Part shown: piece by piece, positions 25,407 through 37,880 of the stretch
How the letters are laid out: each line of letters starts with the position of its first letter
Numbering within the stretch: the first letter of the stretch is position 1
IMG/VR virus record: IMGVR_UViG_3300032236_001850
Location: 248,001-312,000 of that record
Length of the DNA: 64,000 nt
Reading direction: 5' to 3' (one strand)
Translations under genes and position numbers: made by a program
Notes under the pieces: model-generated
Databases searched by the model: none
What the model saw: the letters and a program-made list of their open reading frames with translations, nothing else
Told to the model about the DNA's origin: nothing

Positions 25407-25435
25407 AAATAATTCAAAAATAATTCAAAAATTAT

Positions 25436-25466
25436 TTTTTTATCCCGTATTTTTAATTTATATTTG
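25436..25466 (+). promoter_or_regulatory. Putative early promoter, Bacteroidota-type TAnnTTTG
   Basis: TTTTTTATCCCG then TATATTTG at 25459-25466, upstream of dCMP deaminase and ECF sigma. Confidence 0.6.
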
Positions 25467-25488
25467 TAGGTAATAAAAATTGTTCCCT

Positions 25489-26043
25489 ATGAAATTTGAA
25501 ATCTACCGAGATACCTCATTTATAACTGAGGATTTTCTCAAAAAACCTACCTGGAAAATTAAGAAAAATAAACTTGAGAATTATTTCGAGGTTTATTTTT
25601 CTGAATCAATAAATTCTAAGCTTGACTCAGAACCTAGAGAACACCAGAAGGACTCGATATACATGGAGATGTCCCAGGTGTGGGCTAAAAATTCTAAATG
25701 TAAGAGAATGCAGGTTGGATCCTTGATAGTTAAGGATAAATCTATCATATCCGATGGATATAATGGTTCACCCAGTGGATTCCCTAATATCTGTGAGGTT
25801 GATGATGTTACCCTACCTTATGTGCTTCATGCTGAAGCTAACGCAATAACAAAATTAGCCAGAGGAACTCAAAGTTCCGATGGCTCGACATTATATGTAA
25901 CCTTATCTCCCTGTTACGAATGTTCAAAACTCATAATACAATCAGGAATCAAGAGGGTTGTATTTTCAGAAATTTATAGAAAGCCAGAATCAATATCTTT
26001 TCTTGCTGAAGCCGGAATAGAGATTTTAAGAAAACCCAAATAA
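25489..26043 (+). CDS. dCMP deaminase (ATG 25489 preferred over TTG 25480)
   Basis: CKRMQVG, GYNGSPSG, HAEANAI, PCYECSKLIIQSGI. Confidence 0.92.
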   Translation: MKFEIYRDTSFITEDFLKKPTWKIKKNKLENYFEVYFSESINSKLDSEPREHQKDSIYMEMSQVWAKNSKCKRMQVGSLIVKDKSIISDGYNGSPSGFPNICEVDDVTLPYVLHAEANAITKLARGTQSSDGSTLYVTLSPCYECSKLIIQSGIKRVVFSEIYRKPESISFLAEAGIEILRKPK

Positions 26044-26044
26044 T

Positions 26045-26713
26045 ATGCAAGGAAAAGAAAAAAATATACAAAAATTAGCAAGTGAATTTATAAAACATAG
26101 AAATGACAGATCCTTTAGAAATCTATTTGAAAGATTAAAACCTGGTATATTAAATCATTGTTTTTTAATAGTAAAAGATCCTTCTCTTGCGGAGGATGCT
26201 TTTTTGAACACCATGTCAAAGATCTGGCAAAAGATAGATCAATATAATGACGAGAGAGGTAATTTTTCAACCTGGTGTTACAACATAGCAAGGAATGAAA
26301 CTTTACTTCTAATGAAGGAGGAAAAGAAGTATAATGCAAGAACAAGTCTGGAGATGGAATTTTTCTCTTCTAATAATGAAGTAGGTGATATTGGTGGAAC
26401 CTACAGCATGGAGGAGGATCAGACAAATTCTTTTTTCAACGAAACAAGTAAATTTGATGAAATATATGGTTCTGTTATAGATGAAATAGAAGGACTTCCG
26501 GATCTTTATAAGAATATTATGATTGATAGGGAGATCAATAATATGAAATATAAAGATATAGCTGAAAAATATGATTTAAAGAAAAGATCAGTAGCAACAA
26601 GAATTAGAAGGGCTAGAAGCAAAATTACAAAGAATGTTGGTACGGAAGCTGTTGAAATTATAACAGGTAAAAGCAGAAACGTTACGAGAAATTCAACATC
26701 AAAGAAACTTTAA
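26045..26713 (+). CDS. ECF-type sigma70 factor
   Basis: Region 2 AEDAF...IWQKIDQY...FSTWCYNIARN; region 4 LPD...KYKDIAEKYDL...VATRIRRAR. Confidence 0.88.
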   Translation: MQGKEKNIQKLASEFIKHRNDRSFRNLFERLKPGILNHCFLIVKDPSLAEDAFLNTMSKIWQKIDQYNDERGNFSTWCYNIARNETLLLMKEEKKYNARTSLEMEFFSSNNEVGDIGGTYSMEEDQTNSFFNETSKFDEIYGSVIDEIEGLPDLYKNIMIDREINNMKYKDIAEKYDLKKRSVATRIRRARSKITKNVGTEAVEIITGKSRNVTRNSTSKKL

Positions 26714-26745
26714 GTGATTTTTTCTGTATAAAATAATAAATTGTT

Positions 26746-27192
26746 ATGTTTAAATTGCATAGAGTAATTAAAGAAATAGCACTATATAGAGAATTTACTA
26801 AACAGATAAAATCTGAGGAACTCAATTCACCTTCATGGAGTAGAAGAAATTTAAGAAGAGATTATTTGAATAGAATATACACTGTGGTAAATCTACCACC
26901 TGAGGTTCTCCTGTCTAATGATCTACCAAAGGAAGCTAGACCTTCTTTCGTTCTTAATGAGATAAAACCAATAAACGATTATCTAAAATCTTTAAATCTA
27001 GAAGAAATACTGACACTTTGGATAGATCCAGTTAAAGGTACAAATGAGGAATCATATCTAGTTGTCTACCAGTTTGTTTTTAGAGAAATAAGTTGGTTAT
27101 GGATATTTAGATTTATTATCGAGCTTGGTGTTATTGGGTTTGCCGTTATAAAATGGCCATGGATTTCTAATCTATTACACCTTCCATGGTAG
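26746..27192 (+). CDS. Hypothetical protein with C-terminal membrane anchor
   Basis: Hydrophobic WLWIFRFIIELGVIGFAVIKW. Confidence 0.65.
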   Translation: MFKLHRVIKEIALYREFTKQIKSEELNSPSWSRRNLRRDYLNRIYTVVNLPPEVLLSNDLPKEARPSFVLNEIKPINDYLKSLNLEEILTLWIDPVKGTNEESYLVVYQFVFREISWLWIFRFIIELGVIGFAVIKWPWISNLLHLPW

Positions 27193-27998
27193 AGGCAATA
27201 GAGAAGGCAAGACTTGAGATAAATGCCAAGCTAAAGTTTTTTGAAGATAATAAATTCAATTTTGATGAGCCCAGTCATGTTTATAGATATAATGGAGTAA
27301 AGTTTGATTCTGTTACTACATATCTTAAAACATTTAAAACTCCGTTTGACAAGGAATATTGGTCCAAGAAGAAAGCTAGGGAGCAAGGAGTCGATCAATC
27401 CGTTATATTGAACGAATGGAAAAAGAAAGGAGATGTTGCTAATGATCTTGGAACAAGAGTACATAAATTTATAGAGGATTTCTGGAGTGGATTAAATCCT
27501 GAATTACCGGAGGAGGGAACTGAATATAGAACAAGAGTTGATAAATTTTTGGATTTATATAACAGAAAATTCCATTCTCTCGTCCCTTTAAAATCTGAAT
27601 TAAGAATATTTTCTAAGAAGTGGAGACTAGCAGGAACCATAGATCAACCATTTCTTTTTTGGGATTCTAAAAGAAATAGAGTACTCTTTATATTGGGTGA
27701 TTGGAAAACGAATGGTGAATTTAAGGATGACAACCATCCTAAGGGAAAATACAAAAAGCTTCTTAGACCATTTACATTCCTTTATGAAAATCACCATAAT
27801 GAGTATTCCATTCAAATATCCCTTTATAGATTAATATTGGAAGAAGAATTGGGTATAGAAACAGAGAGCGGATTTTTGTGTCATATTGGACCTGATGATG
27901 AGCCCAAAATATATCCTGCTAAAGATCTAAGAGAACCGTTAAAGGCATATTTGGATCAAAATAGATGTAATAATCTTGATATTTTTGATCTAGCATAG
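27186..27998 (+). CDS. PD-(D/E)XK exonuclease (lambda-exo/Cas4-like fold)
   Basis: SVTT, GTRVH, E-LRIF, AGTID, DWKT, Y..Q..LY motifs. Confidence 0.8.
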   Translation: MVEAIEKARLEINAKLKFFEDNKFNFDEPSHVYRYNGVKFDSVTTYLKTFKTPFDKEYWSKKKAREQGVDQSVILNEWKKKGDVANDLGTRVHKFIEDFWSGLNPELPEEGTEYRTRVDKFLDLYNRKFHSLVPLKSELRIFSKKWRLAGTIDQPFLFWDSKRNRVLFILGDWKTNGEFKDDNHPKGKYKKLLRPFTFLYENHHNEYSIQISLYRLILEEELGIETESGFLCHIGPDDEPKIYPAKDLREPLKAYLDQNRCNNLDIFDLA

Positions 27999-28024
27999 AA
28001 ACAAAAAATAAAAATCAACTAAAA
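27998..28024 (+). promoter_or_regulatory. Putative middle promoter GAAAC...AACTAAAA
   Basis: Shared motif class upstream of 28046. Confidence 0.45.
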
Positions 28025-28045
28025 ATATAAAATATAAAAACTATT

Positions 28046-28573
28046 ATGTCAAAACAAGGTAAAAAATTAGAAAAAATTGAGGCTATAAATGATGGCCCTG
28101 ACGCATCATCAGCTGTTGATTTTAACGATACAGATTTTGTTAGTACTCTTGATGATGCTTTAATTAAAGAATTAAAAGAAAAGCTTGAGAATAAAAAATC
28201 GGAAATCAGAACTAAAGTTTATGCTGTTTCTTGTACTAAAGAGATTTTCTCTCTATATAGCGACTTCATAAAAAATAAAGCTGAATGGGCTTCCACTGAA
28301 GCTCTTGGTATCATCCAAATCAACAAGGAGATTCAAAAAATTGAGAAAGACGGAATAAAAGATAATGTTATCTTTTTAGGAGCTCTTCCTCTTGAGGCTA
28401 GTCACTATTTCATATCTAAATCTAAAGGTATAGGAGTTGATAGTGCAACTGAATTTATTACACTTTATAAAGCTTTTGATCAGGCACTTTCTGATGCTAA
28501 GAAAGATGCAACAGAGGTTAAGGAGATTGAATCTCAGCTTAATGCAGCAATGCAAGGTGTATCATTGGGATAA
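28046..28573 (+). CDS. Hypothetical protein
   Basis: 175-aa ORF followed by terminator. Confidence 0.7.
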   Translation: MSKQGKKLEKIEAINDGPDASSAVDFNDTDFVSTLDDALIKELKEKLENKKSEIRTKVYAVSCTKEIFSLYSDFIKNKAEWASTEALGIIQINKEIQKIEKDGIKDNVIFLGALPLEASHYFISKSKGIGVDSATEFITLYKAFDQALSDAKKDATEVKEIESQLNAAMQGVSLG

Positions 28574-28593
28574 TAACAACACATACAAAAAAT

Positions 28594-28620
28594 AAAGCTA
28601 GGTTATCCTAGCTTTTTTTG
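28594..28620 (+). terminator. Intrinsic terminator
   Basis: AAAGCTAGG-ttat-CCTAGCTTT plus T-run. Confidence 0.8.
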
Positions 28621-28634
28621 TGATTATTTTTTTG

Positions 28635-28642
28635 GATATATA
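28635..28642 (+). promoter_or_regulatory. Putative late promoter GATATATA
   Basis: Upstream of ATG 28669. Confidence 0.55.
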
Positions 28643-28668
28643 AAAAATAAACATTTAAACTTGTGAAG

Positions 28669-28944
28669 ATGAACAAATTTTTAAACGAAAACGGAAACAA
28701 AATAATTATAGGACTTCTGATTCTGATATTTTTTAAGTCGTGTTTTAATGGCAGTGACATTAAATCAATAAGAAAGGAATTATCAAAAGTTGAATCTAAG
28801 GTTGATACATTAGCTACAAAAAAAGATATCACAATAGAGGGTCTTAGAGTTGAAAAAAGAATGATACAGTCCACTGACAGAAAAATACTTGATGTTAATA
28901 GACAAAGCGAGATTGACAAGGAAATATCTAGATTAAATAAATAA
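28669..28944 (+). CDS. Small membrane or lipoprotein-like protein with coiled coil
   Basis: MNKF...IIIGLLILIFFKSC followed by a heptad region. Confidence 0.6.
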   Translation: MNKFLNENGNKIIIGLLILIFFKSCFNGSDIKSIRKELSKVESKVDTLATKKDITIEGLRVEKRMIQSTDRKILDVNRQSEIDKEISRLNK

Positions 28945-29553
28945 TTGATGGAAAATAGGAGCAAACTGGTTAGAGGATTTGTTATAACTACATTTGTACT
29001 TTTATATCTGATTGTTTCCATCATTTCAACAATACATGTTATAGATTTCTTTAAATTGTCAAATCCTGAATGGCTTGCTATATCATTAGCATTGGCATTT
29101 GAGGTTGGTGCTGCTGCATCATTAGCTTCTTTGGTTGTTTTACATAAGATGAACAAATTTATAGTTTGGAGTCTTTTTATATTATTAACATTGGTACAAG
29201 CGATGGGTAATACATACTACGCTTATTCACATCTTGCCAATTTTAATAAATGGATAGAACTATTTGGTCTTGTTGATGAGGATGTAATCTATCAGAAAAG
29301 AATACTTTCTATAATAAGCGGTGCAATATTACCATTGGTTTCTTTGGGTTTTATTAAATCCCTTGTCGATTACATAAGACCGGAAGAACAAATGGAAAAT
29401 CAAATTGAGAATAGCGAACCTGAAGTTTTGGAAGATTCCCACAAGATAGAAGATATCGTGGATATAGAAAATCCACAGGAGAAAAAGATTACACCACTGA
29501 GAGATATGGTTTACACAGAAGCTCCACATATAGATCCAACTCTTCTTAGATAA
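28945..29553 (+). CDS. Integral membrane protein, about four TM helices
   Basis: Four hydrophobic segments in the N-terminal 140 aa. Confidence 0.7.
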   Translation: MMENRSKLVRGFVITTFVLLYLIVSIISTIHVIDFFKLSNPEWLAISLALAFEVGAAASLASLVVLHKMNKFIVWSLFILLTLVQAMGNTYYAYSHLANFNKWIELFGLVDEDVIYQKRILSIISGAILPLVSLGFIKSLVDYIRPEEQMENQIENSEPEVLEDSHKIEDIVDIENPQEKKITPLRDMVYTEAPHIDPTLLR

Positions 29554-29569
29554 AATAACAAATATAAAA

Positions 29570-30259
29570 GTGCAAAATTTAGAAACACCCAGCATTAACA
29601 ATTACGACGGTGGATCCTCAGCAAGTCCTGGAGGCAACGAAATATTCGGTGGAAATTCTGGATTTCCCATAGGTCCTGGACAATACCCAACAAACGGTGC
29701 TACTGGTTCTTTTAAAACAGAATATAAAAACATAGTAAATACTAGGGATCAATTTAAACTAATAGAGGCTACCTTTCAGAGGTTTAATGAACCAGTGGGA
29801 GTAAAATTTATAAAAGAATCTTTTGATGTTGTCTATCAGTCTCAGGTTTTAGATTTTCTTGATGTTGCTGAATTTTTTCATCCACTGCAGGATTTTTCAA
29901 ATTATCAAAAGCAAACAATAATAATAAATCCAACAACATCATTCAATCTTGATTCTGGATCATTTACTGACACAAATGGAGAAATATCTATGTTGATTGC
30001 AAGAGCTGAGTATCTACCAGAGGCTGCTAATAATGATAGAGTTTTATTATGGGACTATTTGGGTTCTCAGAGAAATTTAATGGGAGATTTTATGGTTCTA
30101 ACCGGAGCTATAAAAAAAGGATACAATTGGAAAGGATGGGATATAGATCCTTTCAGTAATTATGCACATAACGGATTAGCAAATAGTGCTAACGGTGGAT
30201 TTATATTTACCAATCCAACAAGTATGGTTGTAAAACTAACAATAATAACAGCAAACTAA
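29570..30259 (+). CDS. Putative structural protein, paralogue A
   Basis: GTG start; shares MGDFMVLTGA / GW / NGGFIFTNP motifs with the next gene. Confidence 0.6.
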   Translation: MQNLETPSINNYDGGSSASPGGNEIFGGNSGFPIGPGQYPTNGATGSFKTEYKNIVNTRDQFKLIEATFQRFNEPVGVKFIKESFDVVYQSQVLDFLDVAEFFHPLQDFSNYQKQTIIINPTTSFNLDSGSFTDTNGEISMLIARAEYLPEAANNDRVLLWDYLGSQRNLMGDFMVLTGAIKKGYNWKGWDIDPFSNYAHNGLANSANGGFIFTNPTSMVVKLTIITAN

Positions 30260-30260
30260 C

Positions 30261-30746
30261 ATGGCAACAAGACCAATAGCGTGTCCTTATGACGCACCTG
30301 AAGGATTTAGATTTTATAGAGATAATCTAGTTTTAGATGATGGTACAAAATCATCTCCTCCTAAATATCTTTCTATGAAGGATCTTTTTATTGGAGTTGA
30401 TTCTTTTTCGAAAAGTAGGGTTTCTTTAAATCCTGGTGAATCTTTTCTGTTGAGTCAAAGTGACATTGGTGATGATATGGGCTATGTTTCTTTTATTGCA
30501 ATAAAAGCAAAATTCCCGGACACTGTTGTTGAATCTAGGAAATATTTAACCTGGACATATAAGGGTCAAATGATGAATATGGGAGAGTTAATGATTCTTT
30601 CTGGTGCTAAACAATATGCAACAGATTCATCATACGATGGATGGAATTTATCTAAACCTAATGAATACCTTAATAATGGCGGAATGATATTTAATAATCC
30701 ACATACGGATTTTCAGATAAAATTAGAGATATTGATAGGTAGATAG
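30261..30746 (+). CDS. Putative structural protein, paralogue B
   Basis: MGELMILSGA / GW / NGGMIFNNP. Confidence 0.6.
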   Translation: MATRPIACPYDAPEGFRFYRDNLVLDDGTKSSPPKYLSMKDLFIGVDSFSKSRVSLNPGESFLLSQSDIGDDMGYVSFIAIKAKFPDTVVESRKYLTWTYKGQMMNMGELMILSGAKQYATDSSYDGWNLSKPNEYLNNGGMIFNNPHTDFQIKLEILIGR

Positions 30747-30798
30747 CAAAATATTTTGTTTAGTAAATATATAGTAAAAAGTTTCTTGTCCTTGTATG

Positions 30799-30806
30799 GA
30801 TATATA
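30799..30806 (+). promoter_or_regulatory. Putative late promoter GATATATA (second copy AATATATA at 30766)
   Basis: About 22 nt upstream of ATG 30829. Confidence 0.6.
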
Positions 30807-30828
30807 ATCAATAAAAAAAAAGTAAACC

Positions 30829-33402
30829 ATGGACTTTATAAATCAAGTTAAAAAAGTAAAAGAATCAACAAAATCTCCTGAGGTGAAGGCTTTATGTGAA
30901 AGTTACCTTAGTGGTGGTACAGTTTCTAGAGAGAAATTAGTACTTTTGATTAGTGAGAATAACGCATCCGTGGAATCAGATAATACTGGAAATAACATAC
31001 AAAATCATATGGATTTAATAAAAAGAGAAGAGTCGGAGATCTCTAAAAAAGCTGCTGCTTCCCTAATGGAATCATGGGGAGGATTAGGAAAATCTACAAC
31101 AGGTAGTAATTCTGGATCTTATAACGGTAAACCGAATGAGACCAAAAATGATGAAAACTCTCTTTATGAAAGTATTAGTAGTTTAGAATCTTTAGATCCT
31201 GCTGCAAAATCATTTATTGAAACACAGAGTATCAAAAATCTTGGTGTTAGAGGTGCTATAGAGAAAATAAAAGAATCTTCAATATACACATATCCTAAAG
31301 CAAAAATGGTTTGCGAACAATATCAGTACCTTTTGGAAAACAAAGGCATTCCTGAATTTTCACTTATTCATAATTTTGTAAATGAACTTGCTTCATTTTC
31401 TTGGGATTCTTCAATAGCTCCTATTGCTGAGGAACTTAAGGAAAAAACTAAAAAATTATCTAGAGAAATAGAGGTTGCTAAAGTTTTAGAATCTATTAAA
31501 GGAAGCGGAAGCTCTTCATTCTACTCTGAACTTTCTGATACCCTTAATACCTGGTTGGTTTCTGAGAGCAAATCTAATGGATTGTTAATTAGAAACATCT
31601 CTAAGTATTCATTTAACCCAGTAGTAAAAAATCTTATTAATTTCTTAAATATTCAAGAAAGTACAGATAGTAGAAAATTAGAGGTTCCTGTTAATGTACA
31701 AGGTGAATCTACGGTTTCTAAAGTTTATTCTCCCGTTCTTTTTGAAGGTGGAAGAACATTCTTCTTTATTGGCGGATGTATATTCGAAGCAACTTCAAAT
31801 TCATTAAGAAAGTTAGCAAAATCTGAGTATTCTGCTTTATCAGAAGGTTATTTAAGACTTTCTTTAACTACAATGAAACCACACGTTAAAATAAACGAAT
31901 CTGGTATTTCTGTTAAACTGGGTAACAAGATAGTTACTATGGTTGAAGAAAATGATAAAGTTTCTGTTTATCTTGGAAAAGATAAACTTAGATTTGGTGA
32001 CACAATAGGTTTAGCTAAGATCGTTGGTCTTGAATCCTCATCATATTTCGGAGTTAATGAATCTGAGGCTGTTGATGATATCATGACACTTTATACAAAC
32101 TATTCAAATGTTGTTGAATTGGATTTCGCTAAATCGATAACTTCCAATGTTTATGAAGGACTTGCTATTAATCTTTTCAAATGGAATGGACAAATTTATC
32201 TTCAGAAGATAAACGAGGCTATGAGAGAAAATTCACTTTATGAAGTTAATGGATCTCAAGCAGTTGCGATGGTTAAAAACTTTATGAGATATGATATATC
32301 TGAGGGATTAACAGAATTCTTAGAAGGTGAATCTAGAATTAAATCAGTAATGATTAATGATAGAAACAAGGTTCTTGAAAATATTTCTAAGATAGAAGGA
32401 GAAATCAATAAGGTTGAATCTCTTATGGAATCAAATCCATTATACAAAAACTCTAAGGAAATAAGAGTTGCTCATTCTATGTTGGAAAAAGAATTACAAT
32501 CGCTTAAAACTAAATGGAATCAAATAAACATAGAAATCCAAAAAATTGAGGAAGATATAGAGCTTCAGCCAAATCCGGATTTATTTGAGGATCAAAAATT
32601 CAATATTGGTTCTTTTGTGAAAGTTAAAGAATCTGGGGAAACTGGTAAAGTTATCTCTATAGATGGATCATCGGGAAGATACACAGTTCTTTTAGACAGC
32701 GGTAAAACTGCTGATCATCAAATAAACGAGCTTGCTGATTTAGACGAGGCTTTAAACAAAGCTGCTGATGATAATGCAGAATCTGCTGAGGATAACAATG
32801 ATGATGCTGGAGAAGTTAAAGAATCAAACAACCTTAATAAATCTCAGCTTCCTATAGGAGAGCAAAAGAAAATGCTTAAAAAACTTGCAGGAATGCACGG
32901 ATTCTCAAAAGCACCTGGTGCTAATAACGAGAAAATAGATATGGACGGTGATTCATTACATGGATACAACAGAACAATGAACGAGGGTAAAGCTGATCTT
33001 AAGAACGGAACACCTAAAACTAATTATTCTAAAGCTCCTGGTAACGATAAAAAAGCTCCCGCTTCAACTCCTAAAAATAAAACATTAGCAAGTGCTCCTA
33101 ATAAAAAAGGAAATTCTAAGCTTACTAAAGGAACAACAGATCCTAATTTTTCTGATGCTCCTGGTGATGATGTATTAGGCAAAGGTAAAAATGCAAATCC
33201 AAAAAAGAGTTTAGCTGTTGCTCCTGGTGATGGTGCTAGAATAAAAGCTAAAGAATACGGTAAGGATAAACTTAGAGAAGCACCAGATGATAAAAACGGT
33301 GATTTAAGATTTGACGTTTCTGGAGTTAGAGATGAAAAAGAGTACAAAGCTGGATACAATCTTAAGGATCTTAAAGAATCTGAAGAAGTAAAAAAAAACT
33401 AA
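30829..33402 (+). CDS. Large putative head/core protein with coiled coil, KOW/SH3-like module and KAPG-repeat tail
   Basis: FNIGSFVKVKESGETGKVISID..GRYTVLL; repeated (K/S/D)AP(G) motifs; ends at A-AAA-AAC-TAA. Confidence 0.65.
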   Translation: MDFINQVKKVKESTKSPEVKALCESYLSGGTVSREKLVLLISENNASVESDNTGNNIQNHMDLIKREESEISKKAAASLMESWGGLGKSTTGSNSGSYNGKPNETKNDENSLYESISSLESLDPAAKSFIETQSIKNLGVRGAIEKIKESSIYTYPKAKMVCEQYQYLLENKGIPEFSLIHNFVNELASFSWDSSIAPIAEELKEKTKKLSREIEVAKVLESIKGSGSSSFYSELSDTLNTWLVSESKSNGLLIRNISKYSFNPVVKNLINFLNIQESTDSRKLEVPVNVQGESTVSKVYSPVLFEGGRTFFFIGGCIFEATSNSLRKLAKSEYSALSEGYLRLSLTTMKPHVKINESGISVKLGNKIVTMVEENDKVSVYLGKDKLRFGDTIGLAKIVGLESSSYFGVNESEAVDDIMTLYTNYSNVVELDFAKSITSNVYEGLAINLFKWNGQIYLQKINEAMRENSLYEVNGSQAVAMVKNFMRYDISEGLTEFLEGESRIKSVMINDRNKVLENISKIEGEINKVESLMESNPLYKNSKEIRVAHSMLEKELQSLKTKWNQINIEIQKIEEDIELQPNPDLFEDQKFNIGSFVKVKESGETGKVISIDGSSGRYTVLLDSGKTADHQINELADLDEALNKAADDNAESAEDNNDDAGEVKESNNLNKSQLPIGEQKKMLKKLAGMHGFSKAPGANNEKIDMDGDSLHGYNRTMNEGKADLKNGTPKTNYSKAPGNDKKAPASTPKNKTLASAPNKKGNSKLTKGTTDPNFSDAPGDDVLGKGKNANPKKSLAVAPGDGARIKAKEYGKDKLREAPDDKNGDLRFDVSGVRDEKEYKAGYNLKDLKESEEVKKN

Positions 33403-33560
33403 GCCGCAACTTCTATTTCGCTCCTAAGGGCGAGAATCAGGATAAACCTGGACAACCATTCGTTCAATCGATGAAGGGAAAATTCGCTAAAGCACCCACG
33501 GGTAAGGACACCAATCCCAAGGATGAGGAGGAAGATGATTCAGGCGAAAAGAAACAATAA
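33399..33560 (+). CDS. Putative -1 frameshift extension of the 857-aa protein (53 aa)
   Basis: -1 frame reads LSRNFYFAPKGENQDKPGQPFVQSMKGKFAKAPTGKDTNPKDEEEDDSGEKKQ*, continuing the KAP motifs. Confidence 0.55.
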   Translation, partial: LSRNFYFAPKGENQDKPGQPFVQSMKGKFAKAPTGKDTNPKDEEEDDSGEKKQ

Positions 33561-33566
33561 TTTATA

Positions 33567-33600
33567 AGAATGTAGTATTTTTTACTACATTCTTTTTTTA
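33567..33600 (+). terminator. Intrinsic terminator
   Basis: AAGAATGTAGTA-ttttt-TACTACATTCTT plus T-run, placed just after the -1 frame stop. Confidence 0.8.
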
Positions 33601-33605
33601 TGAAT

Positions 33606-33633
33606 GAAATCTTTTAGCATTTAGCAACTAAAA
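33606..33633 (+). promoter_or_regulatory. Putative middle promoter GAAAT...AACTAAAA upstream of gp55-like gene
   Basis: Shared motif class. Confidence 0.45.
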
Positions 33634-33664
33634 TACTAAATACCCAAATATAACCCAAATATTA

Positions 33665-34024
33665 ATGGCAAAAGTTTATGTAAAGAATAGTGAACTCATG
33701 GCAGCAGTGATTGAATCAAAAAATGCTGGAAAATTGACACCCGAAACTATAGAGATGTTCAATCTTATGATTGAAGGTATATCTAAGAAGATGTCATACA
33801 AAGATCCTGAGGATAAAGAGGATTGTATGGCTTTTGCCATGGAAGATCTTTGTAAATATTGGAATAGATTCAATCCAGAAAAATCAAATAATCCATTTGC
33901 TTATTTTACTCAGATAGCAAAACACGGATTTGCTAAGGGATGGAAAAAATTACATCCACCAAAAAATCCAGTAACGATACCATTTAGTTATATTACTGGT
34001 GATGATAATTCATATAACGTATAG
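33665..34024 (+). CDS. gp55: Minimal late sigma factor (T4 gp55-like)
   Basis: RFNPEKSNNPFAYFTQIA matches the gp55 FDP.KS.NPFAYFTQ signature; only 119 aa. Confidence 0.8.
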   Translation: MAKVYVKNSELMAAVIESKNAGKLTPETIEMFNLMIEGISKKMSYKDPEDKEDCMAFAMEDLCKYWNRFNPEKSNNPFAYFTQIAKHGFAKGWKKLHPPKNPVTIPFSYITGDDNSYNV

Positions 34025-34027
34025 ATT

Positions 34028-34513
34028 ATGACTGATATTAAAAAGATAAAACCTAACGGTGAATATAAATCTGGTAAATATGATCCAAAAAATCCAGAAA
34101 AGTATATAGGCGATATCCATAATATCATATACAGATCATCATGGGAATATAGATTCTGTACATATTGTGACACTAATGAAGCAATATTAAAATGGAGTTC
34201 TGAACCCGTGGTTATACCATATTATAATCCTCTTGATAAAAAAGACCATAATTATAATGTCGATTTCTATATTAAGGTTTTGAAAGAAGATAATAGTGAG
34301 CAGGAATGGATCATAGAGATAAAACCTGAAAAACAAACGGTTAAACCTATAATGGAAGGGGTTGTAACGATGGCTAAATTGAAATCCTATAATAGAAATA
34401 TGCAAATATGGATAACAAATCAAGCTAAATTTAAAGCAGCCAAGGAATGGGCTGATAAAAGAGGATATAGATTTGGTGTTATCGATGAAAACTTCCTATT
34501 CAAGAGCAGATAA
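34028..34513 (+). CDS. gp4: Head completion nuclease (T4 gp4-like, TnsA N-terminal fold)
   Basis: KYIGD..NIIYRSSWE...WSSE...IPY...DFYI...IEIKP...NQAKF.AA. Confidence 0.85.
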   Translation: MTDIKKIKPNGEYKSGKYDPKNPEKYIGDIHNIIYRSSWEYRFCTYCDTNEAILKWSSEPVVIPYYNPLDKKDHNYNVDFYIKVLKEDNSEQEWIIEIKPEKQTVKPIMEGVVTMAKLKSYNRNMQIWITNQAKFKAAKEWADKRGYRFGVIDENFLFKSR

Positions 34514-34523
34514 CAAAAATATC

Positions 34524-34531
34524 GATATATA
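34524..34531 (+). promoter_or_regulatory. Putative late promoter GATATATA
   Basis: About 20 nt upstream of portal ATG 34552. Confidence 0.6.
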
Positions 34532-34551: not shown

Positions 34552-36186
34552 ATGGCAGGTTTTGTAGATAATAATAAACCATCAGAGTCACCGGTTATAC
34601 AGAGGATAAGGGAATCAGTTAAAAAATTGAGTACCTTTGGTATGAAGTATGATGACATGGTAATAAGAAATTCGCAAGCTGTCGGTGTAACTGAAGCTGC
34701 ATTTCTTAACAAGAATAAAGCTAACGTTGAAGACGAAAGCATGCTATGGTCTCTAGCCAAGCAGGATATTACATCCAGACAATTCATAGGTTACTTTGAC
34801 AAGGATTATAAGGGAAAAAGAGATTTTCTAAGAATGTTTTCTTTGAATCCTGAAGTTGAATGGGTTCTTGATACCATTTGTGACGAGGCTATAACATATG
34901 ATCCAGCAAACTTTTTTGCGTACCCAGATTTTATAGATCTTTCCGATGTAAACGAAAAGGTAAAAGACGAGCTTTATGACGTTTATAAGAACCTATACGA
35001 TATATGGGGATTCTCCGATGATATAACAGCATGGCAATATTTTAGACAGTTTATAATTGATGGATTTCTAGCTTTTGAAATTGTTTACGATGACAGCGGA
35101 AAAAATATAGTTGGCTTCAAGGAACTTGATCCTATAACATTAATTCCTAGCGTTGAAAAACAACTTGATGGAAGTTTTGTTAGTACATGGACACAATATC
35201 CGCAAGATCCTAAAAAGAAGCGTACTCTCTACGATCCACAAATAATCTATATCTCATATGCTAAGGGTAACTCCATATCGAGAGTTAGTTACATTGAAAG
35301 ATTAATAAGACCTTATAATATATTAAGAATTATAGAATATACTAGGGTTATATGGTCTGTAATGAACGCTTCATTCAAATTGAAAATGACCGTTCCAATT
35401 GGTACCAAATCTCAACAGAAAGGCATGCAAACTCTGGGTGAACTTATGAGTGTATATAAGGAGGACATACAACTTAATGATGAGAGTGGTGAACTTACAG
35501 TTGATGGTAGACCTAAGATTCAATTTTATAAAAATTACCTTATGCCATCAGGTGTTAATGGTACACCAACAATAGAACCAATTAATACGGAGGGACCTAA
35601 TCTTAACGATCCAGCTCCTCTTACATATTTCTTTGATAAATTCATACTTGAATCTAAGGTTCCACCTTCAAGATTTCATAACCCAGATGGTGGTAGCACT
35701 TCACCATATTCAAATGGAGCTGAAGGTCTAGATAAAGAGGAGATAAGATTTTATAAATTTATTTCTAGACTGAGATCAGTGTTTCAGGAGATATTGGTTA
35801 AACCTATGTGGATACAAATGGTTAAAAAATATCCTCATTTAGAAAAGGATTTTCTTTTCAAAAGTCAACTTGGACTTAATTATTGGTCTGATAATCCATT
35901 TAAGGAAAATCAGGAAATTGGTAAAATGACTCAAAGAAAAGAAACAATTACCGGTCTTGGTGCTCTTATGAACGATGACGGTAAACCTTTCTTCTCGAAT
36001 GCTTTTCTTATAGAGGAATTTTTAGGTATGTCTAAACAAGACATAGCAGCAAACAAAGAGGCTAAAGAAAGAAAAATAAAGGAAAAAGCAGCAGCTGAGA
36101 AAAAAGCAGCAGGAGCAACTGGAGCAGCAGGCGGCGGGGGTAAAAAAGAAGGCGGTGAAGAAAAACCACCACAAGTAACACTATAG
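34552..36186 (+). CDS. gp20: Portal vertex protein, copy 1 (T4 gp20-like)
   Basis: FRQFIIDG, ELDP, SYIERLIRPYN.LRI.E...VIW, KNYLMP, EEIRF.KFI.RLR. Confidence 0.9.
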   Translation: MAGFVDNNKPSESPVIQRIRESVKKLSTFGMKYDDMVIRNSQAVGVTEAAFLNKNKANVEDESMLWSLAKQDITSRQFIGYFDKDYKGKRDFLRMFSLNPEVEWVLDTICDEAITYDPANFFAYPDFIDLSDVNEKVKDELYDVYKNLYDIWGFSDDITAWQYFRQFIIDGFLAFEIVYDDSGKNIVGFKELDPITLIPSVEKQLDGSFVSTWTQYPQDPKKKRTLYDPQIIYISYAKGNSISRVSYIERLIRPYNILRIIEYTRVIWSVMNASFKLKMTVPIGTKSQQKGMQTLGELMSVYKEDIQLNDESGELTVDGRPKIQFYKNYLMPSGVNGTPTIEPINTEGPNLNDPAPLTYFFDKFILESKVPPSRFHNPDGGSTSPYSNGAEGLDKEEIRFYKFISRLRSVFQEILVKPMWIQMVKKYPHLEKDFLFKSQLGLNYWSDNPFKENQEIGKMTQRKETITGLGALMNDDGKPFFSNAFLIEEFLGMSKQDIAANKEAKERKIKEKAAAEKKAAGATGAAGGGGKKEGGEEKPPQVTL

Positions 36187-36190
36187 TAAC

Positions 36191-37843
36191 ATGGCAGGAT
36201 TTTTAGACTTTTTAAAACCCAATCAAGCAGCTTTGGGTAACATACTTAAAAATTTGGGTAGCATATCCAAATTTGGTATGCAGTACGATGACATGGTTGT
36301 TAGAAATTCGCAGGCTATTGGTAGAACCGAGGGTGCTTTTTTCAATCAGGAAGGAACAGGATATACTAAGGATAGCGCATTTCAATGGACAGCTTCGTAT
36401 CATGACACTAAGGTAAGAAAATACATAGCTTATTTTGATAAATCATATGGAGAAAAAAGAGATTATTTAAGAAAGTTTTCCATAAATGGTGAGATAGAAT
36501 TCATACTGGATATCATAACAGATGAGGCCATAGTATATGACGATAGAAACTATTTTGCGCAGCCTTCATTTTCCAATCTTGATCTTAAGGACAAAGTTAA
36601 GGAGAGGGTAAGCACACATTTCAATAGACTTTATAATATATTTCAGTTCCAGAATACAGTATTGGGCTGGCAATATTTCAGACAATTTATAATAGATGGA
36701 TTCTTGGCTTTTGAGATAATCTATGATAATAAGGGAAAGGAGATAATAGGATTCAAGGAACTTGATGCTATTTCTTTACAACCAACGGTAGAAAAAGTTG
36801 GTGAAAATGAATATAAGCAGTTCTGGATACAATATCCAAGTAATCCACAAATGTTTAGAAAACTTACTAATGAACAAGTTATCTACATATCATATGCGAA
36901 GGGTAATACTATATCAAGAACAAGTTACGTTGAAAGACTTGTAAGATCTTATAACATTCTAAGAATTATGGAGAATTCTAGAGTTATCTGGAACGTAATG
37001 AATGCCAGTTATAGAATGAAATTCATAATTCCCATAGGAACACAGTCTCCACAAAAAGCCATGCAAACTTTGGGACAACTTATGTCCAACTATAAGGAAG
37101 AGATTAGCATAAATGATTCATCCGGAGAATTAACAGTAAACGGTAGACCTAAGGTTCAATTCTATAAGAATTATTTATTTCCCGAACAGAATGGAGTTTC
37201 ACCAGAGATATCTTCTCTGAATCCAGCTGGACCTGATTTCAATGTTATGGATAATGTTCTTTATTTCTTCAATAAATTAAAAATGGATTCTAAAATCCCA
37301 TATGCTAGATTTGCTGCAAAAAATGGAACACCTGCTAATTACCAAATAGCAATAGATCAGCTTGAAAGAGATGAAATAAGATTCGAAAAGTTTCTAAGAA
37401 GACTTCGTTCAATATTCCAGGAAATCCTGGTTAAACCACTCTATATACAAATGTGTTTGGAATACCCAGAATTGGCTAAAGATAGAAATTTTAAAACCAA
37501 CATAGGTTTAAATTTTAATAGAGATCTTGAATTCGAGGATCAGGTTGAAATGACTAATCTTAAAAAGAAAAGTGAATTTGTAACTGCTCTTTCAGATTTA
37601 AAGGTAAAAGCTGGGGAGGAGGATGTACCTTATTTCGATAATGACTTTCTGATACAGAGATTTTTAGGTATGTCTCCTGATCAATTGAAATTGAACGAGG
37701 AATACAAGAAAAAAGAGGAAAAAGCCGGAGCTGCACCTCCTGCTGCTGGCGGAGAATCAGCACCCGCTGCCGGATCGGCTGCTCCCGCGGGAGAAACCCC
37801 ACCAGCAGGTGGCGAAGCAAAAGCACCACAGGTAACACTATAA
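36191..37843 (+). CDS. gp20: Portal vertex protein, copy 2 (paralogue)
   Basis: Same motifs: FRQFIIDG, SYVERLVRSYN, KNYLFP, DEIRFEKFLRRLR. Confidence 0.9.
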   Translation: MAGFLDFLKPNQAALGNILKNLGSISKFGMQYDDMVVRNSQAIGRTEGAFFNQEGTGYTKDSAFQWTASYHDTKVRKYIAYFDKSYGEKRDYLRKFSINGEIEFILDIITDEAIVYDDRNYFAQPSFSNLDLKDKVKERVSTHFNRLYNIFQFQNTVLGWQYFRQFIIDGFLAFEIIYDNKGKEIIGFKELDAISLQPTVEKVGENEYKQFWIQYPSNPQMFRKLTNEQVIYISYAKGNTISRTSYVERLVRSYNILRIMENSRVIWNVMNASYRMKFIIPIGTQSPQKAMQTLGQLMSNYKEEISINDSSGELTVNGRPKVQFYKNYLFPEQNGVSPEISSLNPAGPDFNVMDNVLYFFNKLKMDSKIPYARFAAKNGTPANYQIAIDQLERDEIRFEKFLRRLRSIFQEILVKPLYIQMCLEYPELAKDRNFKTNIGLNFNRDLEFEDQVEMTNLKKKSEFVTALSDLKVKAGEEDVPYFDNDFLIQRFLGMSPDQLKLNEEYKKKEEKAGAAPPAAGGESAPAAGSAAPAGETPPAGGEAKAPQVTL

Positions 37844-37870: not shown

Positions 37871-37880
37871 TGTCTATTAT

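What the first reader, a model, noticed from the sequence alone, without database searches (positions are those of the whole stretch)
25436..34024. Self-consistent three-tier transcription cascade: host sigma -> phage ECF sigma -> minimal gp55
Seen: the ECF sigma (26045) is second gene behind a host-type TAnnTTTG promoter (25459). The gp55-like gene (33665) sits behind a GAAAT...AACTAAAA motif of ECF-like architecture (33606). Structural genes sit behind GATATATA. Known: T4 uses MotA/AsiA rather than an ECF sigma for middle genes, whereas SPO1 uses successive phage sigmas. Inference: a T4-type virion combined with an SPO1-like sigma relay, each regulator placed under the previous promoter class.
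Basis: inference. Interest (0 to 1): 0.75.

Follow-up and report, generated by a model that had tools for sequence, protein, structure and literature searches.

The report
Sigma-factor relay in a Bacteroidota megaphage
A 434-kb phage of a Bacteroidota-type host carries three sigma factors and at least three interleaved promoter classes arranged so that each regulator gene sits behind the previous class; this is a conserved, testable sigma relay, but which sigma reads which promoter is still inferred.

Summary
All three observations hold at the stated coordinates. The dCMP-deaminase/ECF-sigma operon follows TATATTTG (25459). That element is conserved in every relative examined and belongs to a family of roughly 60 promoters with a T7 run upstream. 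The gp55-like gene (33665) follows a terminator and then TGAAAT-N17-CTAAAAT (33605-33634). In 32 distinct related sequences TGAAAT and TA are invariant at fixed spacing, while the spacer is only 53% identical. GATATATA occurs 92 times in the genome, and 80 copies lie within 90 nt of an ORF-opening ATG. It has no -35 partner and precedes sheath, portal, protease and capsid genes.

- The GAAAY-N16/17-STA class is not private to gp55. It is also conserved before p175 (27998) and the SSB gene, and candidate sites precede helicase and RNR genes, so it looks like a middle class.
- A third phage sigma, 300 aa and RpoD/RpoS-like, lies 69 kb upstream, also behind a TAnnTTTG promoter.

The motif resembles ECF promoters (tGAAACnTTTt/CGTA). 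It could also be read as -13C plus TAnAAT by the RpoS-like sigma. No AsiA, MotA, gp33 or gp45 homologue was detected. The gene and promoter layout is confirmed; the sigma-to-promoter assignments are inferred. I class it as a new variant of a known kind.

The parts
25435..25466 (+). Early ('class B') promoter: TTTTTTTAT run, 15 nt, then the -7 element TATATTTG (25459-25466)
   Evidence: The TAnnTTTG element is conserved upstream of the deaminase/ECF operon in all relatives examined. It belongs to a family of about 60 such promoters in the genome. It matches the Bacteroidota consensus TTTG/TANNTTTG (PMC6847099).
25480..26043 (+). dCMP deaminase, first gene of the operon (the likely start is the ATG at 25489)
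   Evidence: Pfam PF00383 at 7e-26; phrog_174 at 2e-54.
26045..26713 (+). ECF-type sigma factor, 222 aa
   Evidence: Sigma70_r2 42 bits plus r4_2 36 bits. TIGR02937 scores 61 bits against a cut-off of 42.9, and the best subfamily is Bacteroidetes-type TIGR02985. The best solved relative is B. subtilis SigW, 5wuq, E 1e-7. It is the only r4_2 match above cut-off in the genome.
26746..27192 (+). p148: small protein with a C-terminal hydrophobic helix, always directly downstream of the ECF sigma; candidate partner or anti-sigma, untested
   Evidence: No family hit. The ECF-p148 gene pair is kept in a distant clade at 35% and 29% identity. The complex prediction gave no answer.
27186..27998 (+). 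Exonuclease, last gene of the ECF operon
   Evidence: phrog_298 at 8e-30.
27998..28024 (+). Middle-type ('class M') promoter: GAAAC-N16-CTAAAA, upstream of p175
   Evidence: A matching motif is present in 29 of 35 distinct relatives' upstream regions.
28046..28573 (+). p175: phage-only protein of unknown function behind a class M promoter
28594..28615 (+). Terminator-like hairpin followed by a T run, closing the early/middle block
28635..28642 (+). Late promoter GATATATA, upstream of genes 28663-30746
30799..30806 (+). Late promoter GATATATA, upstream of the 857-aa gene
   Evidence: Present in 38 of 39 distinct relatives. Metatranscriptome contigs of relatives begin at 30807-30829, and one 2720-nt contig begins at 30813.
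30829..33402 (+). 857-aa late protein (p857) of unknown function; a conserved -1-frame extension runs to 33560
33566..33601 (+). Intrinsic terminator: 12-bp stem followed by T7, insulating gp55 from the late operon upstream
   Evidence: The hairpin is conserved in relatives, with compensating sequence changes visible in the alignment.
33605..33634 (+). Class M promoter: TGAAAT-N17-CTAAAAT, upstream of the gp55-like gene
   Evidence: TGAAAT and TA are 100% conserved in 32 distinct sequences. In the 31 that meet the fuller pattern, the spacer is 17 nt in 29 and 16 nt in 2. Spacer pairwise identity is 53%. The site scores 23.8 bits in a PWM scan of the genome, against 17.1 for the next hit, which lies in coding DNA.
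33665..34024 (+). gp55-like minimal sigma, 119 aa, sigma domain 2 only
   Evidence: phrog_234 at 2e-15. T4 gp55 7d7c_F at E 2.5e-4, residues 5-96 aligned to 10-113. Pfam r2 at 23 bits.
34028..34513 (+). gp4-like head-completion protein, co-transcribed with gp55 (3-nt gap)
   Evidence: phrog_218 at 3e-48; PF08722.
34524..34531 (+). Late promoter GATATATA, upstream of the portal genes
   Evidence: Present in 39 of 40 distinct relatives.
34552..37843 (+). Two tandem T4-type portal (gp20) paralogues
   Evidence: PF07230 at 5e-56 and 2e-67.

Best explanation
The region is part of a sigma-factor relay in a 434.5-kb myovirus-like megaphage whose promoters are of the Bacteroidota type.

**Step 1.** Host RNA polymerase starts at TAnnTTTG promoters, carrying the host primary sigma and possibly, later, the phage's own RpoD/RpoS-like sigma. 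One of these promoters (25435-25466) drives the operon dCMP deaminase, ECF sigma, p148, exonuclease.

**Step 2.** The ECF-type sigma directs core polymerase to a bipartite class M promoter, (T)GAAAY-N16/17-(C/G)TA(A/G)AA. This class sits in front of the gp55-like gene (33605-33634) and p175 (27998-28024). Elsewhere in the genome it sits in front of the SSB gene and probably the helicase and RNR genes. It therefore behaves as a middle class that includes the late regulator, much as T4 gene 55 is a pre-late gene.

**Step 3.** The 119-aa gp55-like sigma has domain 2 only. It directs polymerase to the single-element promoter GATATATA, found 12 or 21-37 nt before the start codons of sheath, portal, protease/capsid and other late genes. 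A strong terminator directly before the gp55 promoter keeps late read-through out of the regulator gene.

**Shown:** the proteins' family assignments, the motifs, their positions, their enrichment and their conservation.
**Inferred:** which sigma reads which motif, and the temporal order.
For: - **Proteins.** ECF sigma. gp55-like.
- **Early class.** TATATTTG is enriched 14-fold in intergenic DNA. It is conserved before the ECF operon in all relatives. The family has about 60 members. It matches the Bacteroidota consensus (PMC6847099).
- **Class M footprint.** TGAAAT and TA are invariant, the spacing is fixed and the spacer diverges.
- **Class M at other genes.** It is conserved before p175 in 29 of 35 relatives, before the portal gene in 25 of 40 relatives, and before the SSB gene in 4 of 5 relatives.
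- **Class M positional bias.** In the own genome, 11 of 34 hits with spacer 16 or 17 fall in the 10% of the genome that lies 28-110 nt upstream of starts. For spacers 15, 18 and 19 the figure is 2 of 24. The downstream genes are SSB, helicase and RNR.
- **ECF-like architecture.** TGAAATnTTT with (C/G)TA 17 nt downstream parallels the B. subtilis ECF consensus tGAAACnTTTt with CGTA (PMC5758882). SigW is the closest solved relative of the phage ECF sigma.
- **Late class.** 92 copies, 80 of them before an ORF-opening ATG, with no upstream element. It is conserved before p857 and the portal gene. RNA contigs of relatives start 1-23 nt after the motif.
- **No T4 middle system.** AsiA and MotA were not detected.
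- **Wider occurrence.** The three sigmas co-occur in relatives and in Lak and other huge phages.
Against: - No experiment or start-site data link the ECF sigma to class M.
- The ECF gene is not preceded by its own promoter class. Only 1 of 34 relatives shows a match, so the autoregulation usual for ECF sigmas is absent.
- The -10 part of class M is longer than typical ECF -10 elements: seven positions are conserved as acTA.AA. It also reads as -13C plus TAnAAT, a feature of RpoS-type promoters (PMC5758882), and the phage has an RpoS/RpoD-like sigma.
- In one subgroup of relatives (L060-L070) the gp55 upstream motif is degenerate although the ECF gene is present.
- gp33 and gp45 homologues were not detected, so the late step may differ from T4's.
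- The RNA libraries are from relatives and have no DNA control.
Confidence: 0.5

Rival explanations
1. The class M promoters, including the one before gp55, are read by the phage's 300-aa RpoD/RpoS-like sigma (genome 204386-205288, minus strand). The ECF sigma then has a different, small or conditional regulon. The relay would run host sigma, then phage RpoS-like sigma, then gp55.
For: - The 300-aa protein is a full-length group 1/2-type sigma. Its RpoS model match covers 7-283 of 285 positions at E 9e-40. It also matches phrog_351.
- It too sits behind a TAnnTTTG promoter.
- The class M -10 region reads (C/G)TAnAA(T/A), that is -13C plus a TATAAT-like hexamer. A -13C and tolerance of odd spacers and weak -35 elements are RpoS traits (PMC5758882).
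- Many relatives have TTGAAAT, five of six matches to TTGACA.
Against: - With hexamers TTGAAA and TAAAAT the spacer is 19 nt, and with TGAAAT it is 18 nt, both longer than the usual 17.
- The last -10 position is T in only 66% of sequences, which is low for group 1/2 sigmas.
- The sites before p175 and SSB have AGAAAC with no TTG.
- A relative estimated 92% complete has the ECF and gp55 genes and keeps class M promoters but shows no RpoD-like gene. That absence is not proven.
Confidence: 0.27
2. Class M is read by a host alternative sigma or needs a phage activator rather than a phage sigma. The ECF sigma would then serve another purpose, such as host takeover or envelope-stress mimicry, so the gene order only looks like a relay.
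For: - No autoregulatory class M promoter precedes the ECF gene.
- Bacteroidota genomes encode many ECF sigmas that recognise GAAAC-type -35 elements (general knowledge of the family, not tested here).
- More distant phages with both genes (LR756500, Lak) show no such motif before gp55.
Against: - The ECF gene, its position 7.6 kb upstream of gp55 and the class M promoter are all conserved across the whole clade.
- A lytic megaphage would be relying on a conditional host sigma for its late master regulator.
- Two huge phages with ECF homologues (LR756502, LR745206) have TAAAC-N16-C(G/T)TATAAC after a terminator, upstream of gp55.
Confidence: 0.13
3. The motifs are compositional or translational signals of AT-rich leaders, not promoters. 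The genes would be transcribed as long read-through units from a few early promoters.
For: - The genome is 35% G+C and its leaders are A-rich.
- The degenerate GAAAY pattern is not enriched by count in the window.
Against: - The bipartite spacing is fixed while the spacer diverges.
- The motifs sit immediately after strong terminators.
- All 15 GATATATA copies in the window are on the coding strand, against 6.2 expected on both strands.
- RNA contigs of relatives start just downstream of GATATATA, with a step in depth from 4 to 27.
Confidence: 0.05

Closest known systems
Bacillus phage SPO1 sigma cascade (host sigma A, then gp28, then gp33/gp34)
   Same: Successive phage-encoded sigma factors redirect host core RNAP, and the gene for each regulator is transcribed by the preceding class (SPO1 switch described in PMC13401047; details from general knowledge).
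   Different: The final sigma here is a T4 gp55-type, domain-2-only protein reading a single 8-bp element. The intermediate candidate is a bona fide ECF-family sigma. The host system is the Bacteroidota TTTG/TAnnTTTG type. None of the steps has been tested.
T4 late transcription (gp55 with gp33 and the gp45 sliding clamp; late promoter TATAAATA)
   Same: The protein is homologous to gp55. The late promoter is a single A/T-rich 8-mer near -10 with no -35 element. It lies in front of T4-type virion genes: two gp20 portals, a gp4-like gene, sheath, and gp21/gp23-like genes.
   Different: The protein is 119 aa against 185 aa and lacks a counterpart of T4 residues 114-185. gp33, gp45, MotA and AsiA were not detected by HMM. 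The motif is GATATATA. Many sites lie only 4 nt before the ATG, which implies leaderless or near-leaderless mRNAs.
phiEco32 / phage 7-11 phage-encoded sigma with middle and late promoters
   Same: A lytic phage encodes a divergent sigma that takes over middle and late transcription after host-sigma-driven early expression. Its promoters are few and well conserved (PMC4331800).
   Different: Those phages use one phage sigma plus an inhibitor of host RNAP, and the sigma gene is also served by its own promoters. Here there are three phage sigmas, and the ECF gene has no own-class promoter.
Bacterial ECF sigma factors of the SigW type (ECF01), promoter tGAAACnTTTt ... CGTA
   Same: Domain architecture of sigma 2 plus sigma 4. 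SigW is the closest solved relative. Class M has TGAAA(T/C), a T tract after it, and (C/G)TA 16-17 nt downstream. A small membrane-anchored protein is encoded immediately downstream.
   Different: There is no autoregulatory promoter. The linker between sigma 2 and sigma 4 is long, about 45 aa. The -10 conservation is extended. The anti-sigma role of p148 is unproven.
Group 2 jumbo phages sensu Iyer et al. 2021 (including Lak megaphages)
   Same: These phages have no RNAP of their own but encode a minimal sigma and an RpoD-like sigma (PMC7824862). The same trio of sigma homologues is found in Lak and in the LR7565xx huge phages.
   Different: In the passages retrieved by the term search, that survey reports gene content only; the terms ECF and gp55 do not occur in it, and no promoter classes or hierarchy appear there. 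It also reports gp33 orthologues in group 2 phages, which were not detectable here.

Membership tests
ECF (group 4) sigma-70 family | Only sigma domains 2 and 4; no regions 1.1 or 3 | tested here: met
   Pfam r2 covers residues 27-87 and r4_2 covers 144-194. No r3 match. The protein is 222 aa.
ECF (group 4) sigma-70 family | Scores above the curated cut-off of the ECF superfamily model | tested here: met
   TIGR02937 scores 61.1 bits against a cut-off of 42.9.
ECF (group 4) sigma-70 family | Co-transcribed cognate anti-sigma factor | tested here: inconclusive
   p148 is directly downstream, has a C-terminal hydrophobic helix, and the pairing is kept in a distant clade. It has no family match, and the complex prediction gave no answer.
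ECF (group 4) sigma-70 family | Positive autoregulation from its own promoter type | tested here: not met
   The operon is preceded by TAnnTTTG, not GAAAY-N17-STA. Only 1 of 34 relatives has a class M match before the ECF gene.
ECF (group 4) sigma-70 family | Cognate promoter with an AAC-type -35, a 14-17 nt spacer and a short CGT-like -10 | not testable with these tools
   A candidate class, (T)GAAAY-N16/17-(C/G)TA, exists and is conserved. Recognition by this sigma was not measured.
T4 gp55 late sigma family | Sequence homology to gp55 / sigma region 2 | tested here: met
   phrog_234 at 2e-15. 7d7c_F gp55 at E 2.5e-4. Pfam r2 at 23.2 bits, just under the 24-bit cut-off.
T4 gp55 late sigma family | No sigma domain 4; promoter is a single -10-like octamer without a -35 element | tested here: met
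   The protein is 119 aa with no r4 match. At 73 aligned GATATATA sites, the only information outside the octamer is a weak T run upstream and an A-rich stretch downstream.
T4 gp55 late sigma family | Works with the gp33 co-activator and the gp45 sliding clamp | tested here: not met
   phrog_254 (gp33), PF09116 and PF02916 (gp45) gave no match at E <= 1 in the complete genome. Divergent analogues are not excluded.
T4 gp55 late sigma family | Hydrophobic and acidic C-terminal clamp-binding epitope | tested here: inconclusive
   The alignment to T4 gp55 ends at residue 96 of 119. The C-terminal tail contains FSYITGDD, which is conserved in relatives (pattern used), but no clamp is known to test it against. 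The epitope is described in PMC2988020.
Bacteroidota primary-sigma promoter (-33 TTTG / -7 TAnnTTTG) | -7 element TAHHTTTG a few nt upstream of the start site | tested here: met
   TATATTTG lies at 25459-25466 and is conserved in relatives. Consensus from PMC6847099. The start site itself was not mapped.
Bacteroidota primary-sigma promoter (-33 TTTG / -7 TAnnTTTG) | -33 element TTTG/TTG about 18-19 nt upstream of the -7 element | tested here: not met
   Class B has a T7-AT run in that position instead. A separate subclass A of about 19 promoters (genome 180-193 kb) does have TTG 18 nt upstream. In F. johnsoniae the -33 motif is weak and AT-rich tracts dominate.
T4 middle-mode (MotA/AsiA sigma appropriation) | Presence of AsiA and MotA | tested here: not met
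   PF09010 and PF09114 gave no match at E <= 1.
SPO1-type phage sigma cascade | Each phage sigma gene is transcribed from the promoter class of the preceding regulator | tested here: inconclusive
   The promoter positions fit. The assignment of sigmas to classes and the timing were not measured.

The most novel reading that the evidence does not exclude
In a widespread clade of freshwater and gut Bacteroidota megaphages, the switch from middle to late transcription is gated by a true ECF sigma and a membrane-anchored partner (ECF-p148). Release of the ECF sigma from p148, in response to a membrane or envelope cue, would turn on a GAAAY-type middle regulon that includes the gene for a clamp-independent, minimal gp55-type late sigma. 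A second phage sigma (RpoD/RpoS-like) would in parallel replace the host primary sigma at TAnnTTTG promoters. This would be a four-tier, signal-gated sigma network in a virus.
Probability: 0.15. Interest if true: 0.8.

Novelty: new variant of a known kind. Interest (0 to 1): 0.6.

Why it matters
Phage sigma relays such as SPO1's and the T4 gp55 late system are textbook paradigms, but both were worked out in Firmicutes and Proteobacteria hosts.

Here a large uncultured clade combines an ECF-family sigma, an RpoD/RpoS-like sigma and a minimal gp55. More than 100 related contigs were recovered, and more distant homologues occur in Lak megaphages. The promoter classes are cleanly separable and phylogenetically footprinted, in a host phylum whose transcription signals differ from the E. 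coli model.

If the assignments hold, three things follow:
- It shows how T4-type late control was re-wired without MotA, AsiA, gp33 or gp45.
- It supplies orthogonal sigma/promoter pairs for Bacteroidota.
- It allows temporal classes of megaphage genes to be predicted from sequence alone.

Tried and rejected
- **Near-identity search.** A megablast of the region against 50,697 phage records found nothing. No cultured relative carries the ECF homologue.
- **Strict class M search.** The pattern TGAAAT-N16-18-STARAW and a PWM built from gp55 sites alone found only the gp55 site. This suggested a private promoter. I dropped that reading when relatives showed GAAAC variants before p175, SSB and the portal gene.
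- **Natural ECF loss.** I looked for relatives lacking the ECF gene, to correlate with loss of the motif. Every locus with enough flank keeps the ECF gene.
- **G003.** One relative estimated 92% complete lacks a detectable RpoD-like sigma while keeping class M. The neighbours of that gene are not syntenic across relatives, so true absence could not be shown.
- **RNA runs.** No public RNA run holds this phage. Four metatranscriptomes hold relatives. They gave contig starts just after one late promoter but nothing at the gp55 promoter.
- **ECF with p148.** The complex prediction returned no answer.
- **p148 and p175.** Atlas look-ups found only phage hypothetical proteins.
- **T4 factors.** HMM searches for gp33, gp45, AsiA and MotA were negative.
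- **Classical promoters.** TTGACA/TATAAT promoter scans are at chance level, 57 against 59.9 expected.
- **Distant phages.** LR756500, Lak-A1/B5 and Chryseobacterium phage MA9V-2 show no class M motif before gp55. LR756502 and LR745206 show TAAAC-N16-C(G/T)TATAAC.

Full report
**Context.** The window is bases 248001-312000 of a 434,509-bp viral record with direct terminal repeats, 35% G+C, and almost all genes on the + strand. It carries T4-type virion genes: two gp20-type portals, a gp4-like head-completion protein, a tail sheath, a prohead protease and a gp23-like capsid protein. DNA-metabolism genes are interspersed. No near-identical phage record exists. More than 100 related contigs were recovered from IMG/VR. 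Public DNA runs that hold the sequence are pond, aquatic and viral metagenomes.

**Check of the observation.** All three statements are correct at the stated coordinates.
- TATATTTG lies at 25459-25466, preceded by TTTTTTTAT at 25435-25443.
- The ECF gene (26045-26713) begins 1 nt after the dCMP deaminase stop. It has sigma domains 2 and 4 and passes the curated ECF superfamily cut-off.
- GAAAT (33606) and AACTAAAA (33626) follow a 12-bp-stem terminator with a T7 tail.
- The 119-aa product of 33665-34024 matches the late-sigma family phrog_234 and T4 gp55 itself.
- GATATATA occurs 15 times in the window, always on the + strand, against 6.2 expected.

**Early class.** Oriented intergenic k-mer statistics over the whole genome pick out three signals: GATATATA (25.7-fold), TATATTTG(C) (14-fold), and the leader GTAATTAA(A) that follows many TAnnTTTG sites. 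TAnnTTTG promoters fall into two subclasses.
- Subclass A has about 19 members, clustered at genome 180-193 kb. It has TTG 18 nt upstream, which is the canonical Bacteroidota -33/-7 arrangement (PMC6847099), plus a further upstream ACTTTAACG box.
- Subclass B has about 60 members. It has AATAATTTTTTTATT in place of the -33 element.

The ECF operon promoter is subclass B, as is the promoter of DNA ligase at 37880. The TAnnTTTG element before the deaminase/ECF operon is present in every relative examined, down to about 56% deaminase identity.

**A third sigma.** A search of the whole genome with Sigma70_r2 finds three genes: the ECF, the gp55-like gene, and a 300-aa protein at 204386-205288 on the minus strand. 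The 300-aa protein aligns end to end with RpoS and RpoD models below their cut-offs. It also sits behind a subclass B promoter with TATCTTTG. It means that a TAnnTTTG promoter need not imply the host sigma at all times, and that there are two candidates for the next tier. It is present in 4 of 5 large relatives.

**The promoter before gp55.** I aligned the 110 nt upstream of gp55 from the window and 80 related loci, giving 44 distinct sequences. The common layout is a terminator hairpin, a T run, TGAAAT, 17 nt, then (C/G)TA(A/G)A(A/T).
- In 32 distinct sequences TGAAAT and TA are 100% conserved. Spacer pairwise identity is 53%, and the 10 nt downstream are 43% identical. Among the 31 that meet the fuller pattern, the spacer is 17 nt in 29 and 16 nt in 2.
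- One subgroup has CGAAAC-N16-ACTAAAAA. Another (L060-L070) has a degenerate version.

This is a classic phylogenetic footprint of a bipartite promoter. A PWM from these sites scores the window site at 23.8 bits, with the next genomic hit at 17.1 bits inside a gene. At first sight the promoter therefore looked unique.

**It is a class, not a single site.** A relaxed pattern, GAAAY-N16/17-STA, turned up further conserved sites.
- Before p175 in 29 of 35 distinct relatives. The window site is 27998-28024, AGAAAC-N16-CTAAAAA.
- Between GATATATA and the portal ATG in 25 of 40 relatives, though not in the window.
- In the own genome, 11 of 34 hits with spacer 16 or 17 lie in the 10% of sequence that is 28-110 nt upstream of a start. 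For spacers 15, 18 and 19 the figure is 2 of 24.
- The genes downstream include the gp32-like SSB, a helicase operon and nrdB/nrdA.
- The SSB site is retained in 4 of 5 relatives, although its distance to the ATG shifts from -81 to -49.

Class M thus looks like a middle class of DNA-metabolism genes plus the late regulator.

**Which sigma reads class M?**

For the ECF sigma:
- The -35 is GAAAC or GAAAT and is followed by nTTT. The -10 core, (C/G)TA, lies 16-17 nt downstream. This matches the B. subtilis ECF pattern tGAAACnTTTt with CGTA (PMC5758882).
- SigW is the closest solved relative of the phage protein.
- The gene is conserved in position across the clade.
- Two huge phages with ECF homologues show TAAAC-N16-C(G/T)TATAAC after a terminator, upstream of gp55.

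Against the ECF sigma:
- There is no autoregulatory promoter.
- The -10 conservation extends over seven positions and can be read as -13C plus TAnAAT, an RpoS-type signature. The phage has an RpoS-like sigma.

I put the ECF reading at about 0.5, the 300-aa sigma at about 0.27, and a host factor or other reader at about 0.13. A complex prediction of ECF with the downstream p148 gave no answer. The ECF-p148 gene pair is nevertheless conserved at 35% and 29% identity in a distant clade, and p148 ends in a hydrophobic helix. A sigma/anti-sigma relation is therefore a reasonable but untested idea.

**Late class.** Of 92 GATATATA copies, 80 are followed within 90 nt by an ATG that opens an ORF of at least 40 codons. 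Distances peak at 12 nt (14 cases) and at 21-37 nt. Aligned sites show no -35 element, only a T run upstream and an A-rich leader. This is the T4 late-promoter logic (PMC2988020). The motif is conserved before p857 in 38 of 39 relatives and before the portal gene in 39 of 40.

In four metatranscriptomes that hold relatives, RNA contigs covering p857 begin at 30807-30829. One 2720-nt contig at depth 27 starts at 30813, 7 nt after the motif. The upstream contig at depth 4 ends at 30818. This is weak support, because the data are from relatives, are contigs rather than reads, and have no DNA control.

The T4 partners gp33 and gp45, and the middle-mode factors AsiA and MotA, were not detectable. 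The protein lacks a counterpart of T4 gp55 residues 114-185. It therefore works like gp55 in promoter type, but clamp coupling is not shown.

**Operon map of the finding's span.**
1. Class B promoter (25435-25466), then deaminase, ECF sigma, p148 and exonuclease.
2. Class M promoter (27998-28024), then p175 and a terminator (28594-28615).
3. Late promoter (28635), then four genes.
4. Late promoter (30799), then p857 and a terminator (33566-33601).
5. Class M promoter (33605-33634), then the gp55-like and gp4-like genes.
6. Late promoter (34524), then two portal genes, followed by a class B promoter (37880) and the ligase gene.

Three classes are interleaved within 12 kb, each unit bounded by terminators where the class changes.

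**Comparison and novelty.** Sigma relays (SPO1), gp55-type late control (T4) and phage sigmas with few, well-conserved promoters (phiEco32 and 7-11, PMC4331800) are known. Iyer et al. noted minimal and RpoD-like sigmas in group 2 jumbo phages, including Lak (PMC7824862). My searches of the held literature found no description of the following:
- an ECF-family sigma in this phage group;
- the four promoter classes;
- the placement of the gp55 gene behind an ECF-type promoter;
- the apparent absence of gp33, gp45, MotA and AsiA.

I class the finding as a new variant of a known kind. The architecture is solid. The sigma-to-promoter assignments remain inference.

Noticed in passing
window 33385-33562: The 857-aa late ORF ends inside G GTA AAA AAA AAC TAA, an A9 run containing the heptamer A_AAA_AAC. 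In the -1 frame a peptide continues to 33560 (…SRNFYFAPKGENQDKPGQPFVQSMKGKFAKAPTGK…), repeating the ORF's own xxKAPG motif. The same stop plus -1-frame peptide is present in all 9 relatives checked, despite 50-85% protein identity. This is a conserved candidate for programmed -1 frameshifting, not an assembly error.
   Followed up: partly
window 34552-36186 and 36191-37843: Two tandem full-length T4-type portal (gp20, PF07230) paralogues lie behind a single late promoter.
   Followed up: no
genome 204386-205288, minus strand (L118:2386-3288), outside the window: A third phage sigma factor of 300 aa, RpoD/RpoS-like, lies behind a TATCTTTG promoter with the T7 upstream run. It is followed by a DUF7336 gene and is present in 4 of 5 large relatives.
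   Followed up: partly
genome 180-193 kb, outside the window: A cluster of about 19 stereotyped early promoter cassettes, ACTTTAACG-N5-7-ATCGTTG-N18-TTATATTTGC-N3-GTAATTAAAA-N8-12-ATG, precedes small genes. It looks like an immediate-early block, with an extra upstream box of unknown function.
   Followed up: partly
genome-wide, e.g. window 42338: Fourteen GATATATA sites lie exactly 12 nt before the ATG (GATATATAnnnnATG). This implies leaderless or near-leaderless late mRNAs.
   Followed up: partly
window 26746-27192; L113:5611-6114: p148 is a phage-only protein with a C-terminal hydrophobic helix. It stays directly downstream of the ECF sigma even in a clade where the sigma is only 35% identical. 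It is a candidate anti-sigma or partner.
   Followed up: partly
L005-L047 and others, about 60 nt upstream of the portal ATG: In most relatives the portal gene has both GATATATA and, about 20 nt downstream, CGAAAT-N17-(C/G)TAGAAT, that is, tandem late and class M promoters. The window's closest group has only the late one, and a shorter gap between the gp4-like and portal genes.
   Followed up: partly
window 30813-33100: Homologues of the 857-aa gene are among the best covered stretches in riverine, wastewater and freshwater metatranscriptomes of relatives, with depth up to 27.
   Followed up: no
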